In this document: piece by piece, positions 1,929 to 38,792 of the stretch
Position numbering within the stretch: position 1 is the stretch's first letter
How the letters are laid out: every line of letters begins with the position of its first letter
NCBI GenBank assembly: GCA_965644295.1
Contig: CBFFRP010000061.1
Location: forward strand, 1 to 41,119
Direction: 5' to 3'
From: Paraphysomonas bandaiensis
Taxonomy: Eukaryota; Protista; Chrysophyceae
Length of the DNA stretch: 41,119 nucleotides
Program-made: the position numbers and the translations under genes
Notes under the pieces: generated by a model
Told to the model about the DNA's origin: nothing
The model's input: the letters and a program-made list of their open reading frames with translations, nothing else
Database searches by the model: none

Positions 1929-1952
1929 CCATCCTTGCCACGTCCGAGTTGG

Positions 1953-3162
1953 TGTAAAGCCGTGGGCTTTTATAACACCCTTTTACACGTTTTATGACAA
2001 AATCATCATAATAATATTGATAACTATATTATTGCAATAACGATATGATAACATAATATGTAGGGTATATGTAGCTGGTTTTGTATGAGATTGACAACAA
2101 AAGACAGATTATTATTAGGAGAGCAAGACAGCAGAGGCTAATAGGATTTACCCTCACTACTAGGGTTTACCCTCGAACACACGTTTTCTTTGGTCTACGC
2201 GATAGCTACCCGTTGGTTTACGCCTATATCCATACGGTAGTCGGTGTCATAGCGTTTTGAGTTAGGAAGCATTGATTGGTACCGCATGTGCGATATTCGT
2301 AGTCCATTCATCATTATGAGAAGCTTTCTGATGGTTTTGAACAGCTCTATGTGCTTGCTCATCGTTCCGGACTATGATATACGATTATTTTCCCATTGCC
2401 ACTCTCCGTTGATTTTCTCCGGAATGGGGAGGAATTCGTAAGGTGCCATTGGACGTAGATGTAGAGGTGTCATGGGCATGTTAGTGATCTGAATATGAGT
2501 GTATTTGTATGGTCCAGTCTAAAGTACACACTCTTGCAAGGAAATGATATTTAACCGTTCGATTGTAAGCTTTTGAACCCGATTGCATTTTGTCGGTATT
2601 ATGCATGAGTTGGCGATTGTGTATTTCACGTTGTCATGAAATGTGCTTGCAATTTTTGTGGATTCGAATATTGTCATTTTGGGTGTTTGTGGCTCGAAAA
2701 TCGGCGATTTTCTGCAATTCTCAAAAAATTGGGGATTTTTGGGGTTTTGGGACTCAAAAATCGGAGGTTTTTGGAAAGGACCTATTTAGGCGTATTTCAG
2801 GGCGTTTTTGACTATAAACGATGTAGGATATGAATCGTATGTAGTGTAGTACATGTATGAGCATATTGTACGGTTGTGGTTGCATTCAATGTCCTGTGTA
2901 TGAGGAGGAGTCTTTAGACTAGGGGTCTGTCTTTTGTTTCGCTTGTAACTTAGTTTTAATAATAATTCTCTATGAAATTAACATAGTTGGTTGACTGATC
3001 TGTCTATTGGGAGCTTTAGATTGCAGGATACAGGGGAGCTTGTGTTTCTGGCTGTTGGTTTCTTAAAGAGTTATTATTATAGCATTCTGTTTTGTTGTTT
3101 CGATAAACAACCATTTCATATCTTTTCAGTGATCTTAGGTTGCAAGACCTGAGTTGTTCATA
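1953..3162 (+). repeat. Gypsy A 5' LTR (TGTAAAGCC...GTTCATA)
   Basis: Direct repeat of 8673-9883 with only a handful of substitutions and indels. Confidence 0.96.
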
Positions 3163-3173
3163 GTAAATTTACT
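3162..3173 (+). promoter_or_regulatory. Palindrome AGTAAATTTACT at the primer-binding-site position of gypsy A
   Basis: Overlaps the last base of the 5' LTR and is its own reverse complement. No TGG complementary to tRNA CCA follows the LTR. Confidence 0.85.
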
Positions 3174-3230
3174 CACGGTAAAACACGTAAGTGAAGATAT
3201 CATTATTGTAGATTATAGATATATATCGAA

Positions 3231-4700
3231 ATGTCTGATTCGGAGGGTCCTGTTGGTTCATCTGAGTTAGATGAAGTTAAGGAAATGTTACGGGGAATTG
3301 CTCTCAATTTGGAGAACGTCACTAAGTTGTGTGTAGCAACTGCCAGTAGGGTAGATAATCTGGAGTCCAGAATGTCTATTAATGAAGAAGTTTTAGTTAA
3401 TGAGCTGGAGGAAGCTCAGAAGGAAGTAGATGAGGCCATCCGTGACCAGCGTGAAGAGCAGCAGGGACATACCAGAGAGAGTGGCAGGGCTGCCGACGAC
3501 AAAGGCAAGAAGAAAGAGCGAAGGACATCTGTATTCATGAGGGAGGCTGAGTCTTCAGAGGGAATGGAGGTTCCAAAGCATGTCATCATCAATGTTGAAA
3601 AGCCATCCCATAAGCATATTTTTCTGGATTCGATGGAGCTTAGTGATTTTACAAAGTTTATCATCCAATGGTTTGAATATGAACAGATCAATGGGATTAA
3701 GCTTGAGCCAGCCCAGATAGTTAGCAGGCGTGTTCGGAACCTGCTTATGTTCAACAATAGCTTGACGGATAAAATGTTTGTTAAGTTGAGTGCTCAGAAA
3801 TTCTGTGAGCTGATGGCTAAGGAGACCAAGGTGTTGTCCAAAGTGGAGTTCATTGAGACTTTACGATACGCGCTGAGATATTTTAAGCCACTGGATTGGA
3901 AATCAGTGCGGCCGAATACACATGAGCTGTTTTTTCAAGAGATTTTGAAGCGAAAGAGTATTTTTATGCGTACGTTTACTATCATGATGGAGGCCAATAG
4001 TACTAAGTGTCCGCCGGTTGGAGGAAAAGAGTTTGGATCGGCTCAAGTATTTTTGGAGTTGATCGACGAGTCTTACAACAAACGAGTTCTGGCTGAGATT
4101 CCAAGGGTGACGGATACTAATTATGGTAATGTTGAAGAGTTTCTGGATACATACGTTTCCAAGGCGAGTGAGCATTATGAGGCGTCCAAGAACATCAGAT
4201 TGGTGCCTTATGAAGGGTCCGATTTCAGTAGGAAGCAAATTCAAAGGAGTTCGAGGAATCGGGACAATGGATACGTTGCAAAGGAGAAACCGAAATCTTT
4301 AAACAACGTGCAGTTTGCGGACCGAGTTGAGGATGATTTCTACAGTGATTTAGATGACAAGGAGGTTGACCCGATAGTTGTGGTCAAGGATGACGGGATG
4401 TCAGATGATGATTTCGAGAATGAGGTTGAGGAGATGTTGCTCGGCGAACCAGAGTCTGATAAGGAAGCTATAGAACAGGTGATGAACCTGGAGAAGACTG
4501 TTAATCCAACCCGTGGTTGCGTTGCGTATGCGTTGTATGGGAACTGCTACAAAGGGAAGGAATGTAAGCATGTCCAGGGTCATAATGGAGCAGTTGCAAC
4601 GGAAACCCGGAAATGGATGATGAAGAAGCTGTCTCAGATGATGGCAGATGATTCCAAAGGGCCGCGAAAGATTTTGCCGAGGCCTGGTGGAGTGACTTGA
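3231..4700 (+). CDS. gag: Gypsy A Gag-like protein (489 aa) with N-terminal coiled coil and C-terminal CCCH-type finger
   Basis: First ORF after the 5' LTR; CVAYALYGNCYKGKECKHVQGH; homologous to the family B ORF at 34277-36085. Confidence 0.88.
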   Translation: MSDSEGPVGSSELDEVKEMLRGIALNLENVTKLCVATASRVDNLESRMSINEEVLVNELEEAQKEVDEAIRDQREEQQGHTRESGRAADDKGKKKERRTSVFMREAESSEGMEVPKHVIINVEKPSHKHIFLDSMELSDFTKFIIQWFEYEQINGIKLEPAQIVSRRVRNLLMFNNSLTDKMFVKLSAQKFCELMAKETKVLSKVEFIETLRYALRYFKPLDWKSVRPNTHELFFQEILKRKSIFMRTFTIMMEANSTKCPPVGGKEFGSAQVFLELIDESYNKRVLAEIPRVTDTNYGNVEEFLDTYVSKASEHYEASKNIRLVPYEGSDFSRKQIQRSSRNRDNGYVAKEKPKSLNNVQFADRVEDDFYSDLDDKEVDPIVVVKDDGMSDDDFENEVEEMLLGEPESDKEAIEQVMNLEKTVNPTRGCVAYALYGNCYKGKECKHVQGHNGAVATETRKWMMKKLSQMMADDSKGPRKILPRPGGVT

Positions 4701-4703
4701 CAA

Positions 4704-7700
4704 ATGTGCGAGGCTAATGGTTCGCAGGATCACGAAGAAATATTGTACGGTTTGAATGATCCTGAGACTGTTAGTCGAGTTTTCCTCAGAAATTTGATGA
4801 ATGTCTGTAATACGCGAGAACGAAAAGACTTGACATTGGCTCATTCTGGGGGAAGCATTGTATGTGATGATAACTATATAATATCTGTGCGTGGAATATT
4901 GTTCGACACTGGAGCCCTAACATCTAACTTCATTTCCAAGGATTTGTTTGAGACGTTTAGAAATCATGTGTGTGAAAACAAAGTCATAAAAAAAGAAACA
5001 GTTATAGGATTTGCCGATAAAACGTCGAGAATGAAGTGTAGTTTTGTAGTGAAATTAAAATTGAGGTTTGAGAGAGAAGACTCCAAGGGAGAGTTCGTGT
5101 TATATGACGGGGATTTCATTGTTGCTGATATGGGTAGCAACGATATTATTATTGGACTTCCGGCTATCGTTAAGGATCTATGGGATTATTTTCTATTTAT
5201 GCTTAAAGGAAGGACTATTGAACGAATTGAATCAGAAGTAAGTTTTATTAAAAGGCGTGAGGACGATGTTACCGAGGATGATTTGTTGTTGAATGCGGTT
5301 GAAGAATTATTGCAGCCGTGGTGTGACAGTAGTAGGGAGGTAGCACCTGAAGAATTGGATGTTCCGGACCCTTCGCAGTTCGGATTTGCCTCAAGTTTTC
5401 TTGGAAAGACTAGAGAGGAAGCTTTGAGCGAGTTCGAGGATATGTTTGGTGAGCACGTGTCTCCAGAGTTCTCAGCAGCGCGACCGGTGCTGGAGTTATT
5501 GAGGACTAAGGGAGTAGAGGTATTTGTTCCAGAGCGGTGGGAAGGTATAAAAGGAGTGGATCCGTTGAACATCAAGTTCGCTGAGAATTTGCCTCCTAGG
5601 ATCAAGCCGAAGGCAAGACCCGTAAATCCTAGATTATATGAGGATGCGGAGAAGGAGTTTAGGAGACTGTGTGGTTACATCTATGTTCCTAGTAGGTCGC
5701 CATGGGCTTCTTGTTTGGTGATCGCGCCAAAAGCCACGAAACCTTTTATTAGGATTTGTGGGGATTACGTGCAAATCAACAAGTACATTCCAAGTCCACA
5801 CTATACAGTTCCTAATGTAAGACATGAGTTGGATCGTATTATTGGCTATAAGATATTTATGGACATTGACCTCACGAATGCGTTCCATCAGATCAGGTTG
5901 CATGAGAACACATCTGAAAAATTGTCAGTTCAAACACCGTGGGGCCAATTTCAGCCTTTATTCCTTCCGGAGGGAGTGTCTCCAGGGATTAGTGTGTTGC
6001 AAGAAGCGGTAGTCAAATTGTTTGGAGATCTGGAATGGGCGCTGTGTATATTTGATAATGTTCTGTTATTGGCACATGATTTTGATGATGCGTATAAGAA
6101 GCTGGAGATTTTCCTGGATAGATGCATTGAACATGGAGTTGTGTTGAAATTTGCAAAGACCTGGTTAGGATTTAGGGAGATCAAGTTTTTTGGCTATTTG
6201 GTAAGGCACAATAGTTTCGAGCTCACGGACGATAGGAAAGAGGCTTTATTGAAGATTCCTTTTCCAGAGAATGGAAATAGATGTAAGAAGATTAGATCTT
6301 TGTTGGGTCTGGGAGTATTCTTTGCTCCATTTGTTCAGAATTACTCAGATTTGGTTAAACATCTTACGGATATGACTAAGAGTAGTTTTAATTGGGAAGA
6401 AACGACATGGCAGCACGATTATAGGCAGGAGTTTGAAAACTATAAGAGTGGTTTGCAACAGTCTTGTGCTTTGTTTTATCCGAATTATGATCTTGAGTGG
6501 ACACTTAGGACAGATGCTAGTGACTATGGAGTGGCAGGCATTCTTTTCCAGACTGTTGAGGGAACTGGGTCTAGTCCGATTCAACAGCAAACTATTGCTA
6601 TCTGTTCCAAGAAATTGTCAGAGCAAGCCTTGAAGTGGTGTACTATTGAGAAGGAGGGTTTTGGTATATTCTATTCAGTCAAGAAATTTTCGTTTTATCT
6701 GAGAGGAAAGAAATTTACAATCGAGACGGACCACAACAACCTTGTGTGGATGGAGGCATCAGAAGTTGCGAAGATAATTCGATGGAGAATTTATTTGCAG
6801 GATTTTGACTTTTTGATTCGTCATATCCCAGGGAAGAACAATGTGGTTGCGGATTGCTTGTCAAGATTGCTGTATTTGTCCGGATTTGTGGACGAAAGTG
6901 ACGATTTCGACTCAGATGAAGTGAACTTCGTGACACTGCATAACATCTTTGAAAAAGACGATTTTGAGGACGACGTTCAAGAGATCGCGCCGCCTACGGA
7001 GGTACAGAGGATAGATTATTATCAGGCTATCAAAGAGGTTCACAACGCGCAAGCAGGACACTGGGGTGCGAAAGAGACGTGGAAACGTCTGTGTAGGCAA
7101 TTTCCGGGACACGGCGTGCCTTTCAAGGTGGTTGCAGACTTCGTGGACGAATGTATCAACTGTCAGAAGAATAGGCGAGAGCTGAAGCAGCGATTGATTC
7201 CTATTACTAGACATTTAAAACCGCCTCATTCCAGGAGTGCTTTGGGAATTGACGCGGTTGCTATTACACCTGTTTCTAAATCTGGTTACACGCATATTGT
7301 GGTCATGGTTAATTTGTTTACGAAATTGGTGTACCTATATGCGGTGAAAGGAATGACAGCTATCAATTTAGCTACAGCAGTGTGGAAGTGCTGGTGTACA
7401 TACGGGCTCACGGATATGATTATATCAGATATGGGTCCTGATCTCAAATCAGAACTTTTCGCAGAACTGGTTAAGTTGTCAGGACTTCGTCATGTTTTTA
7501 GTATTGCCAACAGGCACGTCAACGGATGTGAGCGTATTATTAAGGAAGTGGTTCGTCACATCCGGGCTATTTGTTTTGATAAGAGAATCGAAGCTGATGC
7601 TGTTTTAGAGGACGAACTGTTACTTGCTTCTATCATGTTCATTCTGAATACCCACGAGAGTAGTGAGACGGGGTATTCTGCATTCGAACTGACGTTTGGG

Positions 7701-8642
7701 TCCCAGGATTCCATTTATAAGAATCTTCTGGCCGCCCAGGGGAGAGACAATGATCCGTCTCATCAGCTGTTGAAAAGGCTGAACGATTACTTAGCTCTAG
7801 TTCGCCAGATATCAGCAGATTACCAGAAGTCTCTAGTTGAGAAACGAGCGGAAGCGGGTTTGGATCCTGCCAAACAAAACCAGTATTGTCCAGGCGATTT
7901 TGTTATGTTCGACGCTGGTGCTAAACCACATCCGAAATTATCCTCGAGGATGAAGGGTCCTTTCGAAGTGGTACGGCAATACAAGAATGATGTTCAAATT
8001 CGAAATCTTCTTACCGGGGGAATTCGGGAATACTCTGTCTCTGATCTTGAGCCATTTTTCGGAGATAAGGAATCGGCTATTGAGGCGGCGATGCGAGACC
8101 ATGAACAATTTAAGGTGGAGGAGATTCTTTCATATACGGGAGATTCACGAACCAAATCTACGATGGTCTTCAAGGTGAAGTATGCGGACGGCGATATCTT
8201 GGACATTCCATGGACACCGGATATTCAGTGTGAGGCATATTACGATTTTTGTGAGTCTAGGCCTTACTTGCGACACCTCGCGTACGACTCGTTTACGGCG
8301 AAGCGTTTTATCTCTTCAATGAGGAAGGAGAATATCACAACAGTTTCGGTTGGAGATACTGTCTATGTTGACCTCAGGTTCTATGGTGACCTGTGGTACG
8401 AGAGTCTTGGTTTACCGGATTATGCCACGGCCGCGTATGTCATGGAATTCACGTACACCCATTGGTATCACAAGAATTCCAAACGCAAGATTAGCGCCCG
8501 TTTTAATCTCAACGGTTCCAACTATGCCTTCGACAACTATTTGGTCTATTGTTGGGGGTCCCAGAAGGATTTTGACCCTGCTCGCATGATTTTGGTTGAT
8601 GCGTCGCTCGCTGCGGCTTATCCCAAAATTATTCAGGAGTAG
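4704..8642 (+). CDS. pol: Gypsy A Pol: protease, RT, RNase H, integrase, GPF motif, chromo-like domain, C-terminal extension
   Basis: LFDTGA; SPWAS, ICGDY, DIDLTNAFHQI, IFDN; TDASDYG, EKE, TDHNNL, NVVADCLSR; H-x5-H...CINC, GIDAV, ISDMG, NGCER; KGPF. In frame with gag across a TGA. Confidence 0.95.
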   Translation: MCEANGSQDHEEILYGLNDPETVSRVFLRNLMNVCNTRERKDLTLAHSGGSIVCDDNYIISVRGILFDTGALTSNFISKDLFETFRNHVCENKVIKKETVIGFADKTSRMKCSFVVKLKLRFEREDSKGEFVLYDGDFIVADMGSNDIIIGLPAIVKDLWDYFLFMLKGRTIERIESEVSFIKRREDDVTEDDLLLNAVEELLQPWCDSSREVAPEELDVPDPSQFGFASSFLGKTREEALSEFEDMFGEHVSPEFSAARPVLELLRTKGVEVFVPERWEGIKGVDPLNIKFAENLPPRIKPKARPVNPRLYEDAEKEFRRLCGYIYVPSRSPWASCLVIAPKATKPFIRICGDYVQINKYIPSPHYTVPNVRHELDRIIGYKIFMDIDLTNAFHQIRLHENTSEKLSVQTPWGQFQPLFLPEGVSPGISVLQEAVVKLFGDLEWALCIFDNVLLLAHDFDDAYKKLEIFLDRCIEHGVVLKFAKTWLGFREIKFFGYLVRHNSFELTDDRKEALLKIPFPENGNRCKKIRSLLGLGVFFAPFVQNYSDLVKHLTDMTKSSFNWEETTWQHDYRQEFENYKSGLQQSCALFYPNYDLEWTLRTDASDYGVAGILFQTVEGTGSSPIQQQTIAICSKKLSEQALKWCTIEKEGFGIFYSVKKFSFYLRGKKFTIETDHNNLVWMEASEVAKIIRWRIYLQDFDFLIRHIPGKNNVVADCLSRLLYLSGFVDESDDFDSDEVNFVTLHNIFEKDDFEDDVQEIAPPTEVQRIDYYQAIKEVHNAQAGHWGAKETWKRLCRQFPGHGVPFKVVADFVDECINCQKNRRELKQRLIPITRHLKPPHSRSALGIDAVAITPVSKSGYTHIVVMVNLFTKLVYLYAVKGMTAINLATAVWKCWCTYGLTDMIISDMGPDLKSELFAELVKLSGLRHVFSIANRHVNGCERIIKEVVRHIRAICFDKRIEADAVLEDELLLASIMFILNTHESSETGYSAFELTFGSQDSIYKNLLAAQGRDNDPSHQLLKRLNDYLALVRQISADYQKSLVEKRAEAGLDPAKQNQYCPGDFVMFDAGAKPHPKLSSRMKGPFEVVRQYKNDVQIRNLLTGGIREYSVSDLEPFFGDKESAIEAAMRDHEQFKVEEILSYTGDSRTKSTMVFKVKYADGDILDIPWTPDIQCEAYYDFCESRPYLRHLAYDSFTAKRFISSMRKENITTVSVGDTVYVDLRFYGDLWYESLGLPDYATAAYVMEFTYTHWYHKNSKRKISARFNLNGSNYAFDNYLVYCWGSQKDFDPARMILVDASLAAAYPKIIQE

Positions 8643-8653
8643 CTACGGCATCC

Positions 8654-8672
8654 GGGGGGGGAGAAAGGGTAA
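8654..8672 (+). promoter_or_regulatory. Polypurine tract of gypsy A
   Basis: G-run followed by AGAAAGGGTAA directly before the TG of the 3' LTR. Confidence 0.92.
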
Positions 8673-9883
8673 TGTAAAGCCGTGGGCTTTTATAACACCC
8701 TTTTACACGTTTTATGACATCATCATCATAATAATATTGATAACTATATTACTGCAATAACGATATGATAACATAATATGTAGGGTATATGTAGCTGGTT
8801 TTGTATGAGATTGACAACAAAAGACAGATTATTATTAGGAGAGCAAGACAGCAGAGGCTAATAGGATTTACCCTCACTACTAGGGTTTACCCTCGAACAC
8901 ACGTTTTCTTTGGTCTACGCGATAGCTACCCGTTGGTTTACGCCTATATCCATACGGTAGTCGGTGTCATAGCGTTTTGAGTTAGGAAGCATTGATTGGT
9001 ACCGCATGTGCGATATTCGTAGTCCATTCATCATTATGAGAAGCTTTCTGATGGTTTTGAACAGCTCTATGTGCTTGCTCATCGTTCCGGACTATGATAT
9101 GCGATTATTTCCTCCATTGCCATACACCGTTGATTTTCTCCGGAATGGGGAGGAATTCGTAAGGTGCCATTGGACGTAGATGTAGAGGTGTCATGGGCAT
9201 GTTAGTGATCTGAATATGAGTGTATTTGTATGGTCCAGTCTAAAGTACACACTCTTGCAAGGAAATGATATTTAACCGTTCGATTGTAAGCTTTTGAACC
9301 CGATTGCATTTTGTCGGTATTATGCATGAGTTGGCGATTGTGTATTTCACGTTGTCATGAAATGTGCTTGCAATTTTTGTGGATTCGAATATTGTCATTT
9401 TGGGTGTTTGTGGCTCGAAAATCGGCGATTTTCTGCAATTCTCAAAAATTGGGGATTTTTGGGGTTTTGGGACTCAAAAATCGGAGGTTTTTGGAAAGGA
9501 CCTATTTAGGCGTATTTCAGGGCGTTTTTGACTATAAACGATGTAGGATATGAATCGTATGTAGTGTAGTACATGTATGAGCATATTGTACGGTTGTGGT
9601 TGCATTCAATGTCCTGTGTATGAGGAGGAGTCTTTAGACTAGGGGTCTGTCTTTTGTTTCGCTTGTAACTTAGTTTTTAATAATAATTCTCTATGAAATT
9701 AACATAGTTGGTTGACTGATCTGTCTATTGGGAGCTTTAGATTGCAGGATACAGGGGAGCTTGTGTTTCTGGCTGTTGGTTTCTTAAAGAGTTATTATTA
9801 TAGCATTCTGTTTTGTTGTTTCGATAAACAACCATTTCATATCTTTTCAGTGATCTTAGGTTGCAAGACCTGAGTTGTTCATA
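8673..9883 (+). repeat. Gypsy A 3' LTR
   Basis: Direct repeat of 1953-3162, followed by the TTGG TSD and resumed copia sequence. Confidence 0.96.
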
Positions 9884-11489
9884 TTGGCATTCGTCGCACA
9901 ATGTAACATGCAGTTTGATAAGCATCAAACCAGAACGACTTTGGAAGTCCAGATGCCGTCAACATCGTCAGTGTCATCTCCCCAATTGTTCGGAATTTCC
10001 TCTCAGACACCGCGTTGAGCTCTGGCGTGTCTCGTGTTGTATGTGACACCCGAGTCCCATATCGCTGCAACAGATACTCTCTTATCTGCTGACTAATAAG
10101 TTCGGATCCTCCATCGGCATGATACTCCACTATACGGTTCCACCCCTCGTACTTCACTAAGTGGACCTCGCACAAGTGTCGTAGACATTTGAACACCTCC
10201 TCTCCGCTTCGAGTCCTCAATCCATATTCCCATATCATCTTTGTTGCTAAGTCCGTAAATAGGAGCACGTACTTATACCCTTGTCTGGATTCACAATTGA
10301 GGTAGACTGAGATGTCCGCTGTCACTCGTTCCAGAAACCTGACTGCGCTTAGCTCTTCGTTGTCCCGTGATTTGAACGAATGCCTGGTTATCTTCGCCTT
10401 GGCACACCATTTACACAGGGGTTTCTTGCAACTCTTCTCCTTTGCCTTCGAAAGGTGATGTCGTTGTAGTCCTGATCCTCTGAATAACATGTGTCGGTGA
10501 GCTTCTATTAACTTCGATTTCGAGACATGTCCAGTACGCTCATGTAAGCGATCCAACGCATCTTGTCCTGTATTATCCGACAAATTTACCTCCTCCATCT
10601 GATTGCACATAGACACATTTGGCAGATTTAACACCTCCATCAAGTCCACATACGGCATTCCTCCATGCTCATCGTACTCTCCAGTCAACACCTCGTTTCC
10701 AGAGTCCAATTCCACGATTTTAGGCTTTCGAAGCAGTTGTAATCCGTATCCCATTGATCTCAGCATTCCTCCTGACACAATGTTCTTCACCGCTTCTTCA
10801 CTAACTCTGATGTCTCTCCATTCCCCGAATGTACCAGCTCCCTGTGTCTCCAATTGAGAACCCTTTCTAGTTAGTTGGATTGCCCCAAACTCAGGAGTAA
10901 ATGACTCCAGTGCAATTTTATCCTTTACTATAAACAGTCTTTTACTTGCACAACTGTCCAGATATACACGAGGTTCTTCCGACGTATCCACCGATAGCAA
11001 AACCTCTTCTCCAAACATATTCGCTTCATCATCCGACGACTCTCCGTCGTTGACGTATTTCTTCCATTCTGTCTCGAATTTCCTGTTCGATTTTCGAGGA
11101 TTCTCATTATCCGGGTTTTTTATGTTCTTCCGTTTTTTCGACTTGCACTGTCGGGCTTTGTGACTAAAATCTCCACAGATATGACAACCAGTATAATCCT
11201 TTGATCCTGGCTGCTGCACACTCTTCGAAGCCTTTTCCTTTGTCTTCCCTTTTCTTTTGAACTTATCCATTTTTCTTTGTCGTTCCTTAGCATAACAATT
11301 CGCTGCTACATGTCCCTTCTTCCGACAAAATGAACAAACCACTGGCTCCTTCGACGCTGTAAAATTGATCTCTTCAGACTTGTCTCCCTTTAGTTTCTTC
11401 AGCTGCGTCATAGCCTCGTCATACTCTTCACAAGCCTCTTTCACCGAATCAAATGTAGTTGTTGCTTTAGGCATCATCGCTACCGACAT
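9879..11489 (-). pseudogene. gag-pol: copia-1 gag-pol 5' part: two CCHC knuckles, protease, GAG-pre-integrase, integrase core
   Basis: CSFCRKKGHVAANC, CHICGDFSHKARQC, YLDSCAS, LHERTGH...CKWC, TADIS...HADGG...NAVSERKF. The frame stays open upstream to about 11575, where homology ends. Confidence 0.93.
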
Positions 11490-23691: not shown

Positions 23692-24785
23692 TATGCAAAA
23701 CTTAGGTTTTGAAACCTAAGATCACTGAAAAGAAATGCGCTTGTTTGTCGAAACAAGAAAACAGAATGCTTATTTAACTTATCACAGCCAGAAATACAAG
23801 CTCCCAAGTACCTCGCAACCTTAAGATCCCAAAAGGCATATCGATTAACTTAGCTATGATTAGTTAGATATAAAAAGAGAGTGAGAAGAAGACAAGACGG
23901 ACAGACCCCTAGTCACAAGACTCTCCTCCTCATACACGGAACATTGAATACAACCACAACCGTACAATATGCTCACACATGTACTACACCACATACGATT
24001 CATATCCTACATCGTTTATAGTCAAAAACGCCCTGAAATACGCCTAAATAGGTCTTTCCCCCAAAACCGCCGGTTTTTGAGTCCAAAAACCCAAAAATCC
24101 CCAATTTTAGATTGAGTCGCAAAAAACCAAGATCCCCAAGTCTAGAGTCTTGTATTTTCGAGACATATATAAAACCACCAATTTATGAACCACAAAAAAC
24201 TCAAAAATGGCAGTATTCGAATCACCAAAAAATTGCAATCTCATTTCATGGCAATATTATAATCTCATTCCAACCGTTAAATGCATAATACATATCAACT
24301 GTGCACAATATTCACAGAGAATGTTACACATTCATACTTGTACCAAATTATCCCCCATGCCATCCTTACGCATCAGACCTAAGGGCTCTTATCAATTTGT
24401 GCACCGACCTGAGAAATTCTATGGTGAGTATATCAGTGAGAAAATATTCGTATATCGGAGTCCGGAACGATGAGTACGCTCACAGAGTTACTCAAAACCA
24501 TCAAAGGACTTCTCATACCAATGTGTGGTTAACGAATATCAAGACAAAATTACCAAACTGTACTCTAAACTCCAGTAAGCCGCTTCGTCGTCAATGTCTT
24601 CTCTCTTGTAATAATAAAACAAACTACTACATTCATTCACTTCGTTTGCATTATAAACCAAGCTACACAACATCATCCTACATAATAATATACCTATTGT
24701 TATATTGTAATGATTATCATAATATATATCATAGTGACATCATTAAACATTGTCAAAGGGTGTTATAAAAGCCCACGTTATTACA
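23692..24785 (-). repeat. 3' LTR of a diverged family A relative (A')
   Basis: Reverse complement matches the gypsy A LTR at both ends (TGTAA...GTGGGCTTTTATAACACCC; ...CAGTGATCTTAGGTT...CATA). PPT GGGGGAGAAAGGGTAA lies immediately outside 24785. Confidence 0.9.
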
Positions 24786-24818
24786 TTACCCTTTCTCCCC
24801 CCTCCAGATGCCGTGTAG

Positions 24819-26122
24819 CTACTCCTGAATAATTTTGGGATAAGCCGCAGCGTGCGACGCATCAACCAAAATCATGCAATCAGGGTCAAAAACAATAGAC
24901 CAAATAGTTGTCGAAGACATAGTTGGAACCGTTGAGATTAAAACGGGCGCTAATCTTGCGTTTGGAATTCTTGTGATACCAATGGGTGTACTTGAATTCC
25001 ATGACATACGCGGCCGTAGAATAATCCGGTAAACCAAGACTCTCGTACCACATAGAACCTGAGGTCAACATAGACAGTATCTCCAACGGATTCTGTTGTG
25101 ATATTCTCTTTCCTCATTGAAGAGATAAAACGCTCCGCCGTAAACGAGTCGTACGCGAGGTGTTGCAAGTAAGGCCTGGACTCACAGAAATCATAATATA
25201 TGCCTCACACTGAATATCCGGTGTCCATGGAATGTCCAAGATATCGCCGTCCGCATACTTCACCTTGAAGACCATCGTAGATTTGGTTCGTGAATCTCCC
25301 GTATATAAAGGAATCTCCTCCACCTTAAATTGCTCATGGTCTCGCATCGCCGCTTCAATAGCTGATTCCTTCTTATCTCCGAAAAATGGCTCAAGACCAG
25401 AGACACAGACAGTATTCCCGAATTCCCCCGGTAAGAAGATTTGAATTTGATAATCATTCTTGTATTGCCGTACCACTTCGAAAAGACCCTTCCTCCTCGA
25501 GGATAATTTCGAATGTAGTTTAGCACCAGCGTCGAACATAACAAAATCGCCTGTGGACAATACTGGTTTTGTTTGGCAGGATCCAAACCCGCTTCCGCTC
25601 GTTTCTGTACTAGAGACTTCTGGTAGTCTGCTGATATCTGGCGAACTAGAGCTAAGTAATCGTTCAGCCTTTTCAACAGCTGATGAGACGGATCATTGTC
25701 TCTCCCTTGGGCAGCCAAAAGGTTCTTATAGATAGAATCCTGGGACCCAAACGTCAGTTCGAATGCAGAATACCCCGCCTCACTACTCTCGTGGGTATTC
25801 AGAATGAACATGATAGTGGCAAGTAACAGTTCGCCCTCCAAAACAGCATCAGCCTCAATTCTCTTGTCAAAACAGATAGCCCGGATGTGACGAACCACTT
25901 CCTTAATAATACGCTCACATCCGTTGACATGCCTGTTGGCGATACTAAAAATATGACGGAGTCCTGACAACTTAACCAGTTCTGCGAATGAAAAGTTCTG
26001 ATTTGAGATCCGGACCCATATCTGATATAATCATATCCGTGAGCCCGTATGTACACCAGCATTTCCATACGGCTGTCATTCACCGCATATAAGTACACCA
26101 ATTTCGTAAACAAATTAACCAT
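24819..26122 (-). pseudogene. pol: Gypsy A' pol remnant (integrase core to C-terminus), frameshifted and 5'-truncated
   Basis: Near-identical peptides to gypsy A Pol (MVNLFTKLVYLYAV, FSIANRHVNGCERII, AAAYPKIIQE*) spread over several frames. Confidence 0.93.
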
Positions 26123-26659
26123 AAAGCAAACTATTTTCAAACTTGGGAAAAAATAATTCCCAAATATTTTCATTAAAATGATTTCTAGTTGAATATACAT
26201 ATTTTAAGATGAAAAAAGGATATACAGCAGCTTGAATGTTGATAAAAGTAAGGTAATATTATCAAGCTGTTTTTAGGTTCTTAACAAGTTTATTACTTTA
26301 TTGTTATTGTTGCATGCAAAATACAATAGACAATAATCATTAAACAATAATAATGATTGCAAGCTATCTTCTTTCTTCAATTTGCAGTTATCATCAATTA
26401 CTGAATTTTGATGAGCAAGCATAACAAGAGTACCTTCATCAACAAATTTCTTCAATCCCTTCGTTCTCCTCTGTAGTTCTTCTTAAGAACAACGTATGCT
26501 CAAGCAAAACAGAAACTGATCTATAACGTTTTAAAAGGATTTTAAGTGCACGCCAGCGGGCTGCTACACTGTTAAGCTCACCAGCGGGTGATGCTCCTCA
26601 ACTCAGACGCAAACCGCGAAAGAATTTAAATAAATCGTTATTTAAAACGTGTAATAGAA

Positions 26660-29091: not shown

Positions 29092-30115
29092 TATGACGCA
29101 ACCCGGTTTGATAACCAGAATCACGGCTCGCAGTACAGGTATACCACACAAACACGCAAGTGTAAGAACAATGTATTATTAATGCTATGACTACTCTAAG
29201 CAATAACCTAATGCCCAGTTAGTGATTTCCGCCAGAAATCACCACGCAGGTAACACCGCCAGTGCAACAAGATCGTTGGCACCAAGCACTTCGGTTAAGC
29301 CTAAACAAGTGCATAACACCATAGCATACATGTTACACCCACTCCTACTCCTCAACAACATCACAACACCCTGCAACGTCATCACTACCCACAGAAACGT
29401 GTTTATTCTATAAACTGAATACACACAGCAACCTAGGAGTAACGTATAACCGCGTACTAATAGTACACTACATCCTACGTTTTACTTTCTACCTAAATAC
29501 CCATACAAAAACAGTATATCGCCACTTTGGTGTATTTTAGCATTCAAGAACCCAAAACCCCCAATATCCAGGTTATACGTAAATACAACCCTGCATACCA
29601 CGTATTGCATGTCACAATTGATTCCCCACTGAGTCTGGTATGAACACTCGTGCACCTCGAGTATATAATATCCATTCTCCGTTGATGTGATATGTACTTG
29701 CCCCCCTATAGGGTAGTATGGGTAATGCCAGTAAGTATTCCTATGGAAGTATACACTGCAACTGCTACACTGGAATACTGACCCACATAACTTTATTATA
29801 AATTTGTGGCAGGTTTCACATTGCGTGAAGTCACCATCAGCAGATCATAGTGTACATCCTCATCAGCAGATAAAAAGTGGACATCACACCTGAACGTTGA
29901 TTCCGTGTGTAAGTACATCACAGCTCATTACCCCATCCATCATCTTAATGAGTATAACATAGAATATGCATCCTAGACATGGTATAGGGTCCTGATAATA
30001 TAATGTTCTTGATATAGGGTCCTAAACTAATATCACAGGGTCCTGAATGGGCAATGCATGCAGTTCTGGTACTATAGCCACGTAGATAGGGCATAGGAAA
30101 TGCCACGTGGTCACA
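29092..30115 (-). repeat. Gypsy B 3' LTR (start either 30115 or 29927)
   Basis: The U5 end ...GCGTCATA is fixed by the repeat. Two PPT|TG candidates: AAGGGGGGGAGGCAG|TGTGA (30115) and GATGGGGTAA|TGAGC (29927). The partner LTR is cut by the window edge. Confidence 0.75.
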
Positions 30116-30418
30116 CTGCCTCCCCCCCTTCGTTTTTGTGAGAAATCCATGGTCGCACACATGTCAATGGGACTAGGTTTGAAATAGCCATCAAAACGAA
30201 CCACCATGGAGTATTATTATCATATTATAGATGTAATTCGGAGAATACTGAAAAATTTCACATCGTAAATTGTGGAGTAGGAACACTTTATACCGACTGA
30301 TTAACTTGTGGAAATTTGCTGGCAAAATCCTCGTCTACCAAGACCATTGTGGAAGAATCGAATTCTTTATGGGCAAAACAATGGATATGGTAATTATCAA
30401 GTCGGAAAGTTTGTTTAG

Positions 30419-33400
30419 TCAACACATTTTTAGTTGAGAGTATCCGTTTGGAACTTTATGATACCAATGTGTGAAGACAAAACGTGCCACATAAGTAATC
30501 AAATGAGAATCCGGTAACTCCAGGCTTTCATACCACAGGTCCCCGAAAACTCTTAAGTCTACATAAGCCTCATCACCTGGCTGAAAACTAGTGATAGGCT
30601 GTTTACGGATTTTTGCAATATATTCCTTTGCCTCTTTAACCGGATAAATAAGATGATATAAATATCTTTTCCTAGAACAGAAATCGGCATATGGAATAGA
30701 GTCAAAAATATCCTTACTGAATGGAATGTCACGAACATCACCATCCTGAAACTTCACAGTAAAAACTAGAGAGGTTCTGGTGTCTCTATCACCTCTGTAG
30801 TATAGAATCGTGTCAATCACATGCTGTTCATGGTCTCTGCAAGCCATGTTATACGCTGTGTCGTGATCGCCCGCAAAAAGTTTAACCTCACGCACATCGA
30901 CTTTCACAACTTGTCCTGTCACCAAATGTCTGCAATCAATGTCATTTTTATATTGAGATATGACTTTGAAAGGACCCATATAACGGTGAGACATCTTAGG
31001 ATGGACTTTAGCACCCTTGTCGAACAAAACAAGATCTCCCGGCTGATATCTGTTCTGCTTGTCGACCGGTATACCTTGGCTAGCCCGCTCTTGCACAAGA
31101 CGCTGTTGATAAGCATGCGAAGCTGCCCTGAGCTCACGAAGGTTATCATTAAAACGTTTAAGTCGTGCATGCGCATCCTGGGAAACAGAGTCAGTGTCCA
31201 CGTTAAAATAACGCTTGTCCTCCGATCCAAAAGTTAACTCAAATGGTGAGAATCCCGTCTCAGATGACACCTCAGAGTTAAGAATGTGTTGGACACTGGC
31301 GATCCAGCTAGGATCTTCAAAAACATCCTTGCGCTCTTGACGCTCGCTAGCATCATATACTAGAGCTCGTAGGTGACGTACTACCTCACCTATGATACGT
31401 TCTGAGCCATTCGCATGCCGGTTGGCTATACTGAACGTATGGCGCATTCCCATGTATTCCGTTAGCTGTTGGAATAGATCCGAAGTTAAATCCGGACCCT
31501 GGTCCGAAATCACGACGTCCGTGTGACCGTAATAGGACCAATACTTCCACACAGTATTCGCTAAATTCAAAGCCGTTACTCCTTTTACTGGTTCCAGAAA
31601 AACGAGCTTTGTGTGAAGGTTCACTATCACATTGATATGAGTGTAACCGTCCTTGCCATGTGGAGTAATCTCCACTGCATCAATTCCAATAGCACTGCGA
31701 GCCCCCGGTGGTTTTAGGTTGCGCACTATGGGAATAAGTGCTTCCTTCATGGCTAACCGGGTTTTCACGCAAGTTGGACAGTTGGATATATATTCTGCTA
31801 CTACCTGATATGGTATTCCATGCCCTGGAAAACGTTTATTGAGACGAATCCAAGTAGCTTTCCCTCCAAGATGACCTACGCGAGAGTTGTGTACCTCACG
31901 CAAGCATTCCTCACGAGATATATTCATGGAAGGTTGTTCTTGGTCACCGAGATCCGACGGGTCCATAAAATTTCCTAGGAATGAGAAATACTCAGAATCC
32001 TGACAGTCCTCTCCCAGAAAATAGGCATCATCCCACATAGAATCATCCAAGAACATGCCCGACAGATAAGCCAGTTGGTGTTCCCTGGATAACCAGTCTG
32101 CCAACCAATTCTGTGCTCCAGAAATATGTCGGATTTTAAAATTGAATGATTGCAAGAATATTCTCCATCTAACAATTTTTGGTACCTCAGACGCTTCCAT
32201 CCAGAGCAAATTGTTATGGTCAGTCTCTATAGTAAACTGTTTTCCAACTAAATAGTACGCTAATTGTTTAACCGAATAGTAGATACCATAGCCCTCCTGC
32301 TCTATAGTAGCCCATTTCATTGCTTGCTCTGAAAACTTTTTAGATATAAAGGCAATAGGTTGCAATTGAGCTTCTCCTGTTGGTAATATCTTCCGTTGAA
32401 GTAGTACCGAACCTATACCAAGCTCACTTGCATCCGTCCGTAAAATCCACTCTAACTCATAATCAGGGTAGAAGAGCTCACAAGCATCTTGTAAACCTTT
32501 TATGAAACGTTTGTACTCAGCTTCATAATCATGACGCCAAGTAGATTTATTCCAATTGAAAGATTTCTTAGTGAGGTCCGTTAAATGACCTACTAAGTCA
32601 GAATACTTTGGCGTGAAGCTGGAAAAGAAAACTCCCTTGCCTAGCAGAGATCTAGCTTGTTTAGTCGATGATGGCATGGGTATGTTTGCCAACGCTTCCT
32701 TTTTATCCGGACACACTTCATACGATTTGTGTTTGCATACATATCCGAAAAAATTAACTTTCTTAAAACCAAGCCAGCTCTTAGCCATTTTCAACTTGAT
32801 GTTTCTCTCCAGACATCTGTCAATAACTCGTTCCAACTTTTCATAAGCATCCTGGGGATCGTTGGCTAGTATTAGCATATTATCAAAGATAACGATAGCC
32901 CAGTCTGAAAAATCGGCAAATATCTCCCGAACCACCTCTTGCAGAACACCAGTAGCAGGCGCTATACCCTCTGGCATGAAATTAGGTGCAAACTGTCCCC
33001 ATGGCGTTTGAATGGACAATTTCTCGGAAGTTTCCTCATCTAAAGGTATTTGATGAAACGCATTTGTAAGATCTATATCCAAATAATATGGAAAATTAAT
33101 GATCTTGTCAAGTTCATGTTTGACATTGGGAATAGTGTAGTTTCCCACATGCATATGATCATTGATCTTAACGTAATCCCCACAAAATCGAATGTAAGGA
33201 GGTGTGGCCTTGGGCGCTACTACAAGACAAGAAGCCCATGGCGACCTACTCTTCCGGTAAAAATACCCACACAGACGACGAAATTCTTTCTCTGAGGCTT
33301 CCCATAGCTTCGGATTAATAGGCCTCGCCTTGGGTTTGATCCGATCCGGAAGTGTATCTTTCCACTTAATTTTTAAAGGTTCAACACCTTTTACACCAGA

Positions 33401-34261
33401 CCACTCATCTGGTACAAAGACTTTAACCGCTTTAGTTCGTAGGAGATGCATCACATTTGTTTGTTCCTTCATCTCACTACTAACATGGGTCTCCAACAAC
33501 TGCTCATAGTCTTTTAAAGCTTCCGCTCTAGTCTTTCCTAAGAATACCAAAGCTTCTTTAAATTGAACCGGCAATTCGGAATCCTCTTCCTCCGGTGCAA
33601 TTTGAGTACTCGCTTTAGACCATGGTTCCACTATTTGTCCATGCTCTAAACCAGACAAATCATCATGAGTCGAAATCTTCTTGGTATCACTTTCTATCTC
33701 ATAAGATGTTTGTTCAAAAGCATGCCTCATCAATTCACACATAAAGGGATACAAAGTACCAGTAAGTGCCGGCAATCCAAGTATGACATCATTATGTTTC
33801 ATGTCAATAATTAGGAAATCCCCTTTGAACTGATACTGTTTTCCATAAGGGTCAGCCAACAAAAGATTGAGTCTGACTCCTTGTGTGACTGTTTTTATAG
33901 TAGTACTATCCGCCAATACTACTCTATGATTCGCATCGTATAAAAATTCGGGGTTTAGCTCTGGCATTAAACTCTCAACCAGACCCCTAGACACATAGTT
34001 GGCTGAAAGCGCTCCCGTATCGCAAAGTACGGTGATCAATTTTTCCGAATTCTCTCTCAAATTATTGTTCATTATTAGCCTAGCTACAGTATGTGCTGAT
34101 GTCATTCTTCGCGTATTAGGAAAGCAAGCATACAGCTTAGCTTGCCCCTCGGTTTGCACAGAACACAATGCCGCCGTGAATGTAGACTCTTCAAATTGTA
34201 AGCAACAATCGTCATCCCCGTCACACCCATTAACTACACTGACATCCTGCGCTCCCCGCAC
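30419..34261 (-). CDS. pol: Gypsy B Pol (PR-RT-RH-IN-chromo-like-extension); a 1-nt frameshift near 30455 moves the homologous tail (stop at 30288) into another frame
   Basis: LCDTGA, DIDLTNAFHQI, IFDN, TDASELG, TDHNNL, ADWLSR, GIDAV, ISDQG, NGSER, MGPF. The other frame continues SKRILSTKNVLTKQTFRLDNYHIHCF...MVLVDEDFASKFPQV, matching the A tail. Confidence 0.94.
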   Translation of the reverse strand: MRGAQDVSVVNGCDGDDDCCLQFEESTFTAALCSVQTEGQAKLYACFPNTRRMTSAHTVARLIMNNNLRENSEKLITVLCDTGALSANYVSRGLVESLMPELNPEFLYDANHRVVLADSTTIKTVTQGVRLNLLLADPYGKQYQFKGDFLIIDMKHNDVILGLPALTGTLYPFMCELMRHAFEQTSYEIESDTKKISTHDDLSGLEHGQIVEPWSKASTQIAPEEEDSELPVQFKEALVFLGKTRAEALKDYEQLLETHVSSEMKEQTNVMHLLRTKAVKVFVPDEWSGVKGVEPLKIKWKDTLPDRIKPKARPINPKLWEASEKEFRRLCGYFYRKSRSPWASCLVVAPKATPPYIRFCGDYVKINDHMHVGNYTIPNVKHELDKIINFPYYLDIDLTNAFHQIPLDEETSEKLSIQTPWGQFAPNFMPEGIAPATGVLQEVVREIFADFSDWAIVIFDNMLILANDPQDAYEKLERVIDRCLERNIKLKMAKSWLGFKKVNFFGYVCKHKSYEVCPDKKEALANIPMPSSTKQARSLLGKGVFFSSFTPKYSDLVGHLTDLTKKSFNWNKSTWRHDYEAEYKRFIKGLQDACELFYPDYELEWILRTDASELGIGSVLLQRKILPTGEAQLQPIAFISKKFSEQAMKWATIEQEGYGIYYSVKQLAYYLVGKQFTIETDHNNLLWMEASEVPKIVRWRIFLQSFNFKIRHISGAQNWLADWLSREHQLAYLSGMFLDDSMWDDAYFLGEDCQDSEYFSFLGNFMDPSDLGDQEQPSMNISREECLREVHNSRVGHLGGKATWIRLNKRFPGHGIPYQVVAEYISNCPTCVKTRLAMKEALIPIVRNLKPPGARSAIGIDAVEITPHGKDGYTHINVIVNLHTKLVFLEPVKGVTALNLANTVWKYWSYYGHTDVVISDQGPDLTSDLFQQLTEYMGMRHTFSIANRHANGSERIIGEVVRHLRALVYDASERQERKDVFEDPSWIASVQHILNSEVSSETGFSPFELTFGSEDKRYFNVDTDSVSQDAHARLKRFNDNLRELRAASHAYQQRLVQERASQGIPVDKQNRYQPGDLVLFDKGAKVHPKMSHRYMGPFKVISQYKNDIDCRHLVTGQVVKVDVREVKLFAGDHDTAYNMACRDHEQHVIDTILYYRGDRDTRTSLVFTVKFQDGDVRDIPFSKDIFDSIPYADFCSRKRYLYHLIYPVKEAKEYIAKIRKQPITSFQPGDEAYVDLRVFGDLWYESLELPDSHLITYVARFVFTHWYHKVPNGYSQLKMC

Positions 34262-34276
34262 GCAATGGTCCTTCCA

Positions 34277-36085: not shown

Positions 36086-36162
36086 CTTCCACCTTAGTTG
36101 CTGTTACACTCTTTAGTTTATATACCCACACGATTTTTCACCTCAGAGTTACGCAGCTCCCT

Positions 36163-37693: not shown

Positions 37694-38083
37694 CTACCTT
37701 TTCCACCTCTCTTACGTAACCGCTGAAGAACAATTTGGCAGCACGGCTGCACATTACCCTCTCTCATCTCTCTCTCTCATAGTTGTTATCAAGCAATATG
37801 AACAGTCCATAGAACTCCCACACAAAAATCCCTAATGACAAGTCAAGCAAAATCATGCCCTGATGAATCTTCTAGTAGAAAATGCTCCATGATACCATAT
37901 GCTCCCGATCTCCTCTTCATAATATCTGTTAAAAATCTCTAGCTACTCAAACTCAGTAGGTGATGCACGCGCTGCAATGTAGGGGATTCCGGGGTATGAG
38001 AGTCATTGCTCCATGCACACCAAAAATCAGAGCCAGTCCGCCTAAGTCGCATCTAGAGGCTCTGTAACAGCCCAAATTGTGAA

Positions 38084-38704: not shown

Positions 38705-38792
38705 GTGACGGGGACTATTGTCTTAACTTGACGTAGATATATCCTTCCAATAATGTTATCAAAATCTGCAGATTTCAAAGCTGCTTTTCGCC

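What the first reader, a model, noticed from the sequence alone, without database searches (positions are those of the whole stretch)
1953..9883. Coherent non-canonical Ty3/gypsy lineage: priming site, RT, integrase, Gag finger, termini and gag-pol junction all deviate together
Seen: families A and B are clearly divergent (weakly alignable Gag, unalignable LTRs) yet share the palindromic PBS, IFDN RT motif, DD(33)E integrase, CCCH Gag, in-frame UGA, ...ATA LTR ends and a long Pol tail. A has intact ORFs, near-identical LTRs and a TSD. A', C and N show further members and a parasite. Inference: an old, still mobile lineage with a modified replication mechanism, rather than decayed copies. I do not recognise this combination from described clades but cannot search.
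Basis: partly seen in the sequence, partly recalled or inferred. Interest (0 to 1): 0.88.

Follow-up and report, generated by a model that had tools for sequence, protein, structure and literature searches.

The report
Diatom gypsy retrotransposons with palindromic primer site
An intact, recently active Ty3/gypsy-type retrotransposon of a silica-forming alga belongs to a large aquatic lineage that has a short self-complementary sequence where the tRNA primer site normally sits and an altered catalytic residue in its reverse transcriptase, which suggests an undescribed way of starting reverse transcription.

Summary
Window 1953-9883 is a complete LTR retrotransposon. It has 1.2-kb LTRs that are 99.1% identical and a 4-bp target duplication (TTGG), confirmed by uninterrupted paralogous sites. 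Gag and pol are in one frame, separated by UGA. The genome holds 14 or more near-identical copies with intact pol and at least six further families.

Four traits span the whole clade, which covers hundreds of 50%-identity clusters in marine and freshwater metagenomes:
- A perfect 12-14 nt palindrome (A-GTA..TAC-T) lies exactly at the LTR/leader border and keeps its self-complementarity through two-sided changes.
- RT motif C reads [I/L/M]FDN where Ty3 has YLDD.
- Gag carries a CCCH finger and no CCHC.
- Pol ends in IN-CTD, a chromodomain-like module and a lineage-specific barrel.

Three other traits mark only sub-lineages: the in-frame UGA (other members are fused), DD33E (others have DD34E) and ...TA termini (half have CA).

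Pol and gag dN/dS is about 0.1, and metatranscriptome contigs cover the element.

Best explanation: minus-strand priming at the palindrome by self-pairing, not by tRNA and not by Tf1-type cis priming. This is inferred, not shown.

Each deviation has a precedent elsewhere (GalEa CHS, nematode YVDN, Saci-2 CCCH). The host group suggests the poorly described diatom 'GyDi' cluster, but I could not test that. Verdict: a new variant of a known kind.

The parts
1949..1952 (+). Target-site duplication TTGG, left copy
   Evidence: paralogous copia copies have a single TTGG.
1953..3162 (+). 5' LTR of element A (TGT...ATA)
3134..3153 (+). Predicted U5 stem-loop just upstream of the LTR end. Equivalent hairpins with different sequences occur in most families.
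   Evidence: MFE folds. Inferred only.
3162..3173 (+). 12-nt perfect palindrome AGTAAATTTACT spanning the last LTR base and the leader; the presumed minus-strand priming site
3231..4697 (+). gag (489 aa)
   Evidence: No Pfam hit. Atlas neighbours are Retrotrans_gag and zf-CCCH clusters.
4518..4583 (+). Gag CCCH zinc finger C-x8-C-x5-C-x5-H
4698..4700 (+). In-frame UGA between gag and pol (context UGA C), followed by a predicted hairpin
   Evidence: Unchanged in a metatranscriptome contig.
4701..8642 (+). pol: PR (DTG at 4899-4916), RT, RNase H, IN and tail; stop TAG
6045..6068 (+). RT motif C, CIFDNVLL (IFDN in place of YxDD)
7041..7538 (+). Integrase: HHCC finger and catalytic D, D-x33-E
7860..8069 (+). 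IN C-terminal SH3-like domain (GPF module)
   Evidence: Model residues 44-113 match PFV, MLV and RSV IN CTDs at Z 6.2-6.7.
8103..8264 (+). Chromodomain-like module
   Evidence: Model residues 125-178 match cpSRP43 (Z 6.2) and HP1 (Z 5.5). Atlas neighbours are rve+Chromo clusters. No Pfam Chromo hit.
8310..8639 (+). Lineage-specific C-terminal small beta-barrel (Tudor-like, weak support)
   Evidence: pLDDT 94. Best Z is 5.8. It occurs in 777 clusters, at the C-terminal end in all but a few of the 150 listed hits.
8654..8672 (+). Polypurine tract, then TAA, before the 3' LTR
8673..9883 (+). 3' LTR of element A
9884..9887 (+). Target-site duplication TTGG, right copy
29092..41119 (-). Element B. 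3' LTR 29092-30115; pol 30291-34276 with a frameshift near 30455; gag 34280-36085; palindrome core 40611-40622; 5' LTR from 40623, cut by the window end.
36163..40335 (-). Nested non-autonomous element N. It has 1.53-kb LTRs (98% identical), TGT..ATA ends, palindrome core 38794-38803, duplication AGGG and a 206-aa orphan ORF at 38084-38704.
23692..26131 (-). Degraded A-like fragment (A'): pol 3' part and an LTR piece

Best explanation
Element A is a functional, recently transposed Ty3/gypsy-type LTR retrotransposon with domain order PR-RT-RH-IN, living in a silicifying stramenopile, most likely a diatom. It belongs to a large and old aquatic clade.

In this clade the tRNA primer-binding site is replaced by a 12-14 nt perfect palindrome that begins with the last base of U5. 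The 3' LTR ends exactly where the palindrome starts, so minus-strand DNA synthesis must start at the palindrome. The palindrome differs between lineages but always stays self-complementary, so the selected property is pairing of the site with a second copy of itself.

Most likely two co-packaged genomic RNAs pair at this site, or one strand folds back on itself. An RNA 3' end created just after the palindrome (always before a T) then primes copying of U5-R. This would be a trans or fold-back variant of Tf1-type self-priming.

Gag-Pol is made by read-through of a leaky UGA in this sub-lineage and as one fused ORF in another. The RT works with D...D-N instead of D...D-D. The tandem IN-CTD, chromodomain-like and barrel tail probably tethers integration to chromatin.

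Shown here: the anatomy, conservation, covariation, purifying selection and recent activity. Inferred: the priming mechanism, the read-through and the role of the tail.
For: Structure and borders.

Activity:
- The genome has 19 full-length matches at 99% identity or more. Of these, 14 have an open 1313-aa pol frame.
- Some copies have 100% identical LTRs.
- Marine runs from 13 studies hold the element, and contigs from two metatranscriptomes cover most of it.

Selection: dN/dS is 0.07-0.11 for pol and 0.10-0.11 for gag.

Palindrome:
- I found 36 distinct junctions with 5 core variants. Each has A before and T after the core.
- In 21 aligned sequences, 100% of 126 cells pair. Two pairs change on both sides, and 0 of 500 shuffles reach the observed covariation score.
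- More distant relatives carry different palindromes at the same place. One is checked against its 3' LTR.
- The 13-mer occurs 97 times in the genome against 8 for the control.

Not tRNA: the sequence after the palindrome differs in every family.

Not Tf1-type: no LTR segment is complementary to the site beyond chance.

FDN: present in 125 of 125 scored relatives and aligned to Ty3 YLDD.

CCCH: present in all genome families and in 17 of 21 fused relatives.

UGA: found in 7 of 7 genome families and 8 metagenome loci, never TAA or TAG, mostly followed by C. One of seven host SIT genes ends in TGA.
Against: There is no direct evidence for any primer. All RNA data are assembled contigs, which cannot show RNA ends, and the libraries may contain DNA.

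A trans-cleavage model has to explain two things that are untested: how the template keeps its own priming site, and how the long RNA primer is removed.

The invariant AGTA/TACT edges could instead pair with the 3' end of a host RNA.

Downstream read-through structures are clear in only 2 of 6 families.

The chromodomain and barrel assignments rest on Z scores of 5-7.
Confidence: 0.6

Rival explanations
1. The palindrome is a dimerisation, packaging or protein-binding site that merely abuts U5. The real primer is a host RNA, such as a tRNA fragment, whose 3' end pairs only with the few invariant bases (AGTA) next to U5.
For: The outer bases A-G-T-A...T-A-C-T are invariant in the main group. 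Retroviral dimer-initiation sites are palindromes (discussed in PMC5445492).
Against: More distant relatives have unrelated palindromes at the same border, for example CAATATTAATATTG and TAATATCGATATTA, so no shared 3' primer end exists. A dimerisation site does not have to start at the exact last base of U5, yet it does in all 36 junctions.
Confidence: 0.2
2. Classical Tf1/sushi-type cis self-priming: the first bases of the element's own transcript fold back onto the site and are cut off as the primer.
For: Chromodomain-bearing Tf1/sushi/Tcn1 elements lack tRNA sites and self-prime (PMC6317226). A U5 hairpin precedes the site here, as in Tf1.
Against: The best match in any LTR to the complement of the site has 4-6 mismatches in 16, no better than in shuffled LTRs in 6 of 7 elements. 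Tf1 sites are not palindromic.
Confidence: 0.07
3. A GalEa-type 'conserved hairpin site': the palindrome pairs with a second, nearly complementary box a few dozen bases downstream on the same RNA.
For: Fungal GalEa copia elements have a palindrome that includes the final A of the LTR, at the same position (PMC5445492).
Against: No downstream partner box beyond chance was found within 70 nt in 20 elements. GalEa belongs to a different superfamily.
Confidence: 0.08
4. The deviant motifs reflect decayed, non-autonomous copies that are mobilised by another element.
For: The B copy in the window is damaged, and non-autonomous N exists.
Against: dN/dS is about 0.1. FDN and CCCH are invariant across hundreds of clusters. 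Many copies have intact frames.
Confidence: 0.01

Closest known systems
Ty3 of Saccharomyces cerevisiae and Ty3/gypsy (Metaviridae) in general
   Same: LTRs and a short target duplication. Domain order PR-RT-RH-IN. RT-RNase H is the best PDB match (E 1e-35). HHCC and an rve-type integrase.
   Different: Ty3 uses a tRNA-iMet site, YLDD, a CCHC nucleocapsid, a +1 frameshift and DD35E (established knowledge). This clade has a palindrome, IFDN, CCCH, an in-frame UGA or a fused ORF, and DD33/34E.
GyDi, the diatom-specific Ty3/gypsy cluster (Maumus et al. 2009, PMC2806351)
   Same: Same superfamily and same host group. This is probably the same clade.
   Different: The paper text I searched, and the one supplementary file held, gave no hit for primer-site or GyDi structural details. 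I could not obtain GyDi sequences, so identity is unproven.
Tf1/sushi/Tcn1 self-priming chromoviruses
   Same: No tRNA site. Integrase followed by a chromodomain. A U5 hairpin.
   Different: Their site is complementary to the transcript's first 11 bases and is not palindromic. That complementarity is absent here. They keep YxDD.
Fungal GalEa Ty1/copia 'Conserved Hairpin Site' (PMC5445492)
   Same: A covarying palindrome that includes the final A of the LTR, in place of a tRNA site. Its mechanism is unexplained.
   Different: Copia superfamily. It needs a second box (CHSeq2) that is not found here.
Nematode belpaoviruses (Bel/Pao) with YVDN (bioRxiv 10.1101/2021.11.23.469668)
   Same: The second aspartate of RT motif C is replaced by asparagine in an active lineage.
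   Different: A different family. They keep the tyrosine. No link to a palindromic site is reported.
Saci-2 (CCCH Gag) and CsRn1-like elements (PMC2582038); gammaretroviral stop-codon read-through
   Same: A non-CCHC Gag finger. Gag and pol in the same frame, separated by one stop.
   Different: Animal hosts, tRNA sites and canonical RT. MLV uses UAG plus a pseudoknot (established knowledge).

Membership tests
Ty3/gypsy LTR retrotransposons (Metaviridae) | Pol domain order PR-RT-RNase H-IN between LTRs | tested here: met
   Pfam hits in order RVT_1, RT_RNaseH, Integrase_H2C2, rve; DTG upstream.
Ty3/gypsy LTR retrotransposons (Metaviridae) | RT closer to Ty3/gypsy than to retroviruses or caulimoviruses | tested here: met
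   PDB search: Ty3 1e-35, CaMV 2e-28, MLV/XMRV 1e-12. No tree was built.
Ty3/gypsy LTR retrotransposons (Metaviridae) | Usual RT motif YxDD (typical, not strictly defining) | tested here: not met
   IFDN aligns to YLDD and is conserved in 125/125 relatives.
Chromoviruses | Chromodomain C-terminal to the integrase | tested here: inconclusive
   The fold matches cpSRP43 and HP1 chromodomains at Z 5.5-6.2. Atlas neighbours are rve+Chromo clusters. No Pfam Chromo hit. I did not check the aromatic-cage residues against an alignment.
Chromoviruses | Placement inside the chromovirus branch in RT/IN trees | not testable with these tools
   No named reference sequences (GyDB, REXdb, Repbase) were available.
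GyDi (diatom Ty3/gypsy cluster) | Diatom host | tested here: inconclusive
   The genome has several silicon-transporter genes and occurs in marine runs. The species name is coded.
GyDi (diatom Ty3/gypsy cluster) | RT clusters with GyDi1/GyDi2 of Thalassiosira pseudonana | not testable with these tools
   The accession numbers are in a supplementary file that is not held.
Tf1/sushi self-priming elements | Site complementary to the 5' end of the element's transcript | tested here: not met
   No complementary segment in any LTR beyond chance. The transcription start itself is not mapped.
GalEa-type Conserved Hairpin Site | Palindrome that includes the last A of the LTR | tested here: met
   36 of 36 junctions.
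GalEa-type Conserved Hairpin Site | Second complementary box 12-41 bp downstream | tested here: not met
tRNA-primed LTR retroelements | 10-18 nt after the LTR complementary to a tRNA 3' end (TGG...) | tested here: not met
   The site starts GTA. The bases after the palindrome differ in every family. Host tRNAs were not scanned genome-wide.

The most novel reading that the evidence does not exclude
A whole clade of aquatic Ty3/gypsy elements starts reverse transcription by a mechanism not yet described. Two co-packaged genomic RNAs pair through a palindrome at the U5 border, and one is cut to prime the other. The reverse transcriptase active site (D-N instead of D-D) has co-evolved with this RNA:RNA primer. 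The same logic would explain the unexplained palindromic site of fungal GalEa copia elements.
Probability: 0.3. Interest if true: 0.8.

Novelty: new variant of a known kind. Interest (0 to 1): 0.6.

Why it matters
Almost all LTR retroelements and retroviruses prime with a host tRNA. The only well-studied exception is Tf1-type self-priming. This clade is large, active and under selection, and its priming site is defined only by self-complementarity, with natural compensatory variants. It also carries an asparagine at a catalytic position of the reverse transcriptase.

The clade offers a tractable system to ask how such elements prime: there are many identical live copies, transcripts occur in the sea, and diatoms can be transformed. 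The answer would also bear on the unexplained palindromic site of fungal GalEa elements.

On the practical side, annotation pipelines that look for tRNA sites, TG..CA ends and YxDD will probably mis-score these elements, which are abundant in diatom genomes and plankton metagenomes.

Tried and rejected
- Tf1-type complementarity between the LTR and the site: none beyond chance.
- GalEa-type downstream partner box: none.
- UGA as a sense codon in the host: one of seven silicon-transporter genes ends in TGA, so UGA probably terminates host genes too; this rests on that single gene.
- Reinitiation at an ATG after the stop: an ATG lies close to the stop only in family A.
- Transcription start and poly(A) site from reads: all runs are kept as contigs. 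The break at 2943-2966 coincides with a T-run length difference between the two LTRs (2953), so it probably reflects that variant rather than an RNA end.
- N's 206-aa ORF against the Gag proteins: no significant match.
- Pfam on Gag and on the Pol tail: nothing significant.
- Foldseek on the C-terminal barrel: no hit at E <= 0.001.
- Literature: no paper for IFDN or for the palindrome sequence in a retroelement context.
- A reference phylogeny was not possible, because no named reference sequences could be obtained.
Full report
**Anatomy of element A**

Direct repeats at 1953-3162 and 8673-9883 are 99.09% identical. The element interrupts a Ty1/copia pol gene: RVT_2 lies at 237-1928 and rve at 9879-11489, both on the minus strand. 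Four other copies of that copia read ...CGAGTTGG|CATTCG... without an insert. So the insert is exactly 1953-9883, the duplication is TTGG, and the LTR really runs TGT...ATA.

A purine run (8654-8669) precedes the 3' LTR. The internal part encodes Gag (3231-4697) and Pol (4701-8639) in one frame, separated by a single TGA. Pfam finds RVT_1, RT_RNaseH, Integrase_H2C2 and rve in that order, and a DTG protease motif lies upstream.

**The deviant motifs are real**

- Alignment to the Ty3 RT structures puts C-I-F-D-N opposite V-Y-L-D-D. The motif A aspartate and the RNase H acidic residues are kept.
- Alignment to PFV integrase places the catalytic D, D and E with 33 residues between the last two.
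- Gag ends with C-x8-C-x5-C-x5-H. Family B and its relatives have the classical C-x8-C-x4-C-x3-H. No CCHC knuckle occurs.

**Host and copy number**

The genome (62.5 Mb) carries several silicon-transporter genes, and earlier scan notes suggested a stramenopile. A diatom is therefore likely, but the species name is coded.

A 700-aa piece of Pol finds 408 candidate loci:
- 19 full-length matches are 99% identical or more, and 14 of them have an open 1313-aa frame.
- At least six further families are 57-62% identical to A, and most of their copies also have open frames.

Several elements have 100% identical LTRs. Every junction where both flanks could be read cleanly shows a 4-bp duplication.

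**Selection**

Between families, synonymous sites are saturated while dN is 0.08-0.49. Where dS can be measured, dN/dS is 0.07-0.11 for pol and 0.10-0.11 for gag.

**Breadth of the clade**

The protein database holds at least 447 relatives with E <= 0.001 among the 8000 candidates scored. The best 120, at 43-73% identity, come almost entirely from unnamed marine and freshwater assemblies.

Traits that span the clade:
- Motif C is IFDN (122), MFDN (2) or LFDN (1) in every long hit my pattern could place.
- The C-terminal domain of Pol defines 777 clusters at 50% identity. In all but a few of the 150 listed hits it sits at the C-terminal end, consistent with Pol tails and their fragments.
- The CCCH finger is present in 17 of 21 fused Gag-Pol relatives.

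Traits that vary within the clade:
- The D-E spacing is 33 in the nearer relatives and 34 in the more distant, fused ones.
- Among metagenome loci, 23 have a fused gag-pol and 8 have an in-frame TGA (6 followed by C, 2 by T). None has TAA or TAG.
- All seven genome families use TGA, while pol ends in TAA or TAG.
- One of seven host transporter genes ends in TGA, so the host probably reads UGA as a stop; this rests on that one gene.

Stable hairpins follow the stop in families A (z -2.1) and C507 (z -3.3). They are not clear in the other four tested. Read-through is therefore likely but not shown.

**The priming site**

In 36 distinct junctions the LTR is followed at once by a perfect palindrome. 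These junctions come from 16 genome regions and 20 loci from other assemblies. The cores are:

| Core | Count |
|---|---|
| GTAAATTTAC | 21 |
| GTATTAATAC | 5 |
| GTAAATATTTAC | 5 |
| GTAATTAATTAC | 4 |
| GTATCGATAC | 1 |

The last LTR base is always A and the base after the core is always T, so the full palindromes measure 12-14 nt.

On an alignment of 21 sites, all 126 cells pair. Two of six pairs change on both sides, and no shuffle in 500 reaches the observed covariation score. More distant relatives carry unrelated palindromes at the same relative place, such as CAATATTAATATTG and TAATATCGATATTA. In L069 the 3' LTR confirms that the palindrome begins with the terminal CA of the LTR. In the genome, the 13-mer around the site occurs 97 times against 8 for a control.

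LTR termini are TA in 18 junctions, CA in 17 and AA in 1. The ATA end is therefore a sub-lineage variant.

**Why this is the primer site, and what it excludes**

In LTR retroelement replication, everything between R and the 3' end of the annealed primer becomes U5 and is copied into the 3' LTR. This is established knowledge. The 3' LTR stops exactly where the palindrome begins, so the primer's 3' end must anneal at the palindrome.

- A tRNA is unlikely. The site starts GTA rather than TGG. The bases beyond it differ in every family. The inner bases change while keeping self-complementarity.
- Tf1-type cis priming needs a complement at the transcript start. No LTR segment matches better than in shuffled LTRs.
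- A GalEa-type partner box downstream is also absent.

What remains is pairing of the site with another copy of itself. The pairing could be between two genomic RNAs (12-14 bp) or a weak fold-back. An RNA 3' end made just after the palindrome would then act as primer. This mechanism is my inference, and I give it about 0.6. A predicted U5 hairpin ends a few bases before the LTR end in most families and has a different sequence in each. This recalls the U5 stems needed for initiation in Tf1 and Rous sarcoma virus.

**The Pol tail**

A model of the last 303 residues (pLDDT 87) has three small barrels.

| Model residues | Assignment | Support |
|---|---|---|
| 44-113 | Retroviral integrase C-terminal domain | PFV, MLV, RSV at Z 6.2-6.7 |
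| 125-178 | Chromodomain-like | cpSRP43 Z 6.2 at 1.8 A; HP1 Z 5.5; Atlas neighbours are integrase+Chromo clusters |
| last 110 | Tudor/MBT-like barrel | pLDDT 94 when modelled alone; best Z 5.8; no Foldseek hit |

Pfam sees no chromodomain. A chromatin-tethering role is plausible but is only inferred.

**Expression and spread**

Runs from 13 studies (2015-2025) hold element A. Fourteen DNA runs, mostly marine metagenomes, hold over 90% of its sampled words. Two plankton metatranscriptomes hold 57-71%. Their contigs cover most of the element at 99% identity. One 2.1-kb contig spans the LTR end, the palindrome, gag and the unchanged UGA. These are assembled contigs and the libraries may contain DNA, so this is supportive evidence, not proof of transcription.

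**Other elements in the window**

- B (minus strand, 29092 to the window end) shares every trait but is damaged. It has a frameshift near 30455 and carries the nested element N in its leader. Intact B copies exist elsewhere.
- N (36163-40335) has 1.53-kb LTRs, TGT..ATA ends, GTAAATTTAC, a purine tract and the duplication AGGG. It has no pol, and its 206-aa ORF resembles no Gag. It is a plausible parasite of this lineage.

**Comparison with the literature**

- A diatom-specific Ty3/gypsy cluster, GyDi, was named in 2009. My searches of that paper found no description of these features.
- Fungal GalEa copia elements have a covarying palindrome that includes the LTR's final A. Its authors say no known model explains it.
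- Nematode belpaoviruses carry YVDN.
- Saci-2 has a CCCH Gag, and CsRn1-like elements can have gag and pol in the same frame.
- Chromoviruses of the Tf1/sushi/Tcn1 group self-prime.

Each deviation therefore has a precedent. I did not find their combination in one Ty3/gypsy clade, nor a palindromic site in this superfamily, in the searchable literature. I could not query Repbase or GyDB, and I could not build a reference tree.

**Verdict**

This is a new variant of a known kind, of moderate to high interest for the biology of reverse transcription.

Noticed in passing
window 237-1928 and 9879-11489 (minus strand): Element A sits inside a Ty1/copia element. The flank of that copia has at least 40 copies at 99-100% identity in the genome (173 candidates), so this copia family also looks recently active.
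   Followed up: partly
window 36163-40335 (minus strand); ORF 38084-38704; LTR-like piece at window 44-148: Non-autonomous element N has 1.53-kb LTRs and a 206-aa ORF that matches neither Gag nor Pfam. A 106-bp piece 92% identical to its LTR lies at the window start.
   Followed up: partly
window 40584-40599 (minus strand), 11 nt downstream of B's palindrome: A second perfect palindrome of 16 nt, CACAAGAATTCTTGTG, lies in the B leader. Related families have a similar near-palindrome. It could be an additional dimerisation signal.
   Followed up: no
window 3134-3153 and the equivalent places in other families: A predicted stem-loop in U5 ends a few bases before the LTR end in most families. Its sequence differs between families, which suggests structural conservation.
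   Followed up: partly
G000:C70:1-17000 (L028+L043) and L011: Tandem arrays in which consecutive internal regions share one LTR. The unit is 6143 bp and 99.9% identical in C70. A comparable arrangement occurs in an unrelated NCBI assembly.
   Followed up: no
window 3161 joined to 7006 in run X1 (table 5): One DNA contig joins the LTR end directly to the integrase region, skipping 3844 bp. It may be a deletion derivative or an assembly chimera.
   Followed up: no
window 18643-19899 (+): An ankyrin-repeat gene of 418 aa, the only clear host gene among the ORFs I scanned in the window (not all were checked).
   Followed up: no
G000:C499 (L016+L031) and G000:C661 (L027+L042): A family with canonical TG...CA LTR ends. 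In these copies most or all of gag is missing: one has a single 1304-aa ORF, the other only a 150-aa remnant upstream of TGA.
   Followed up: no
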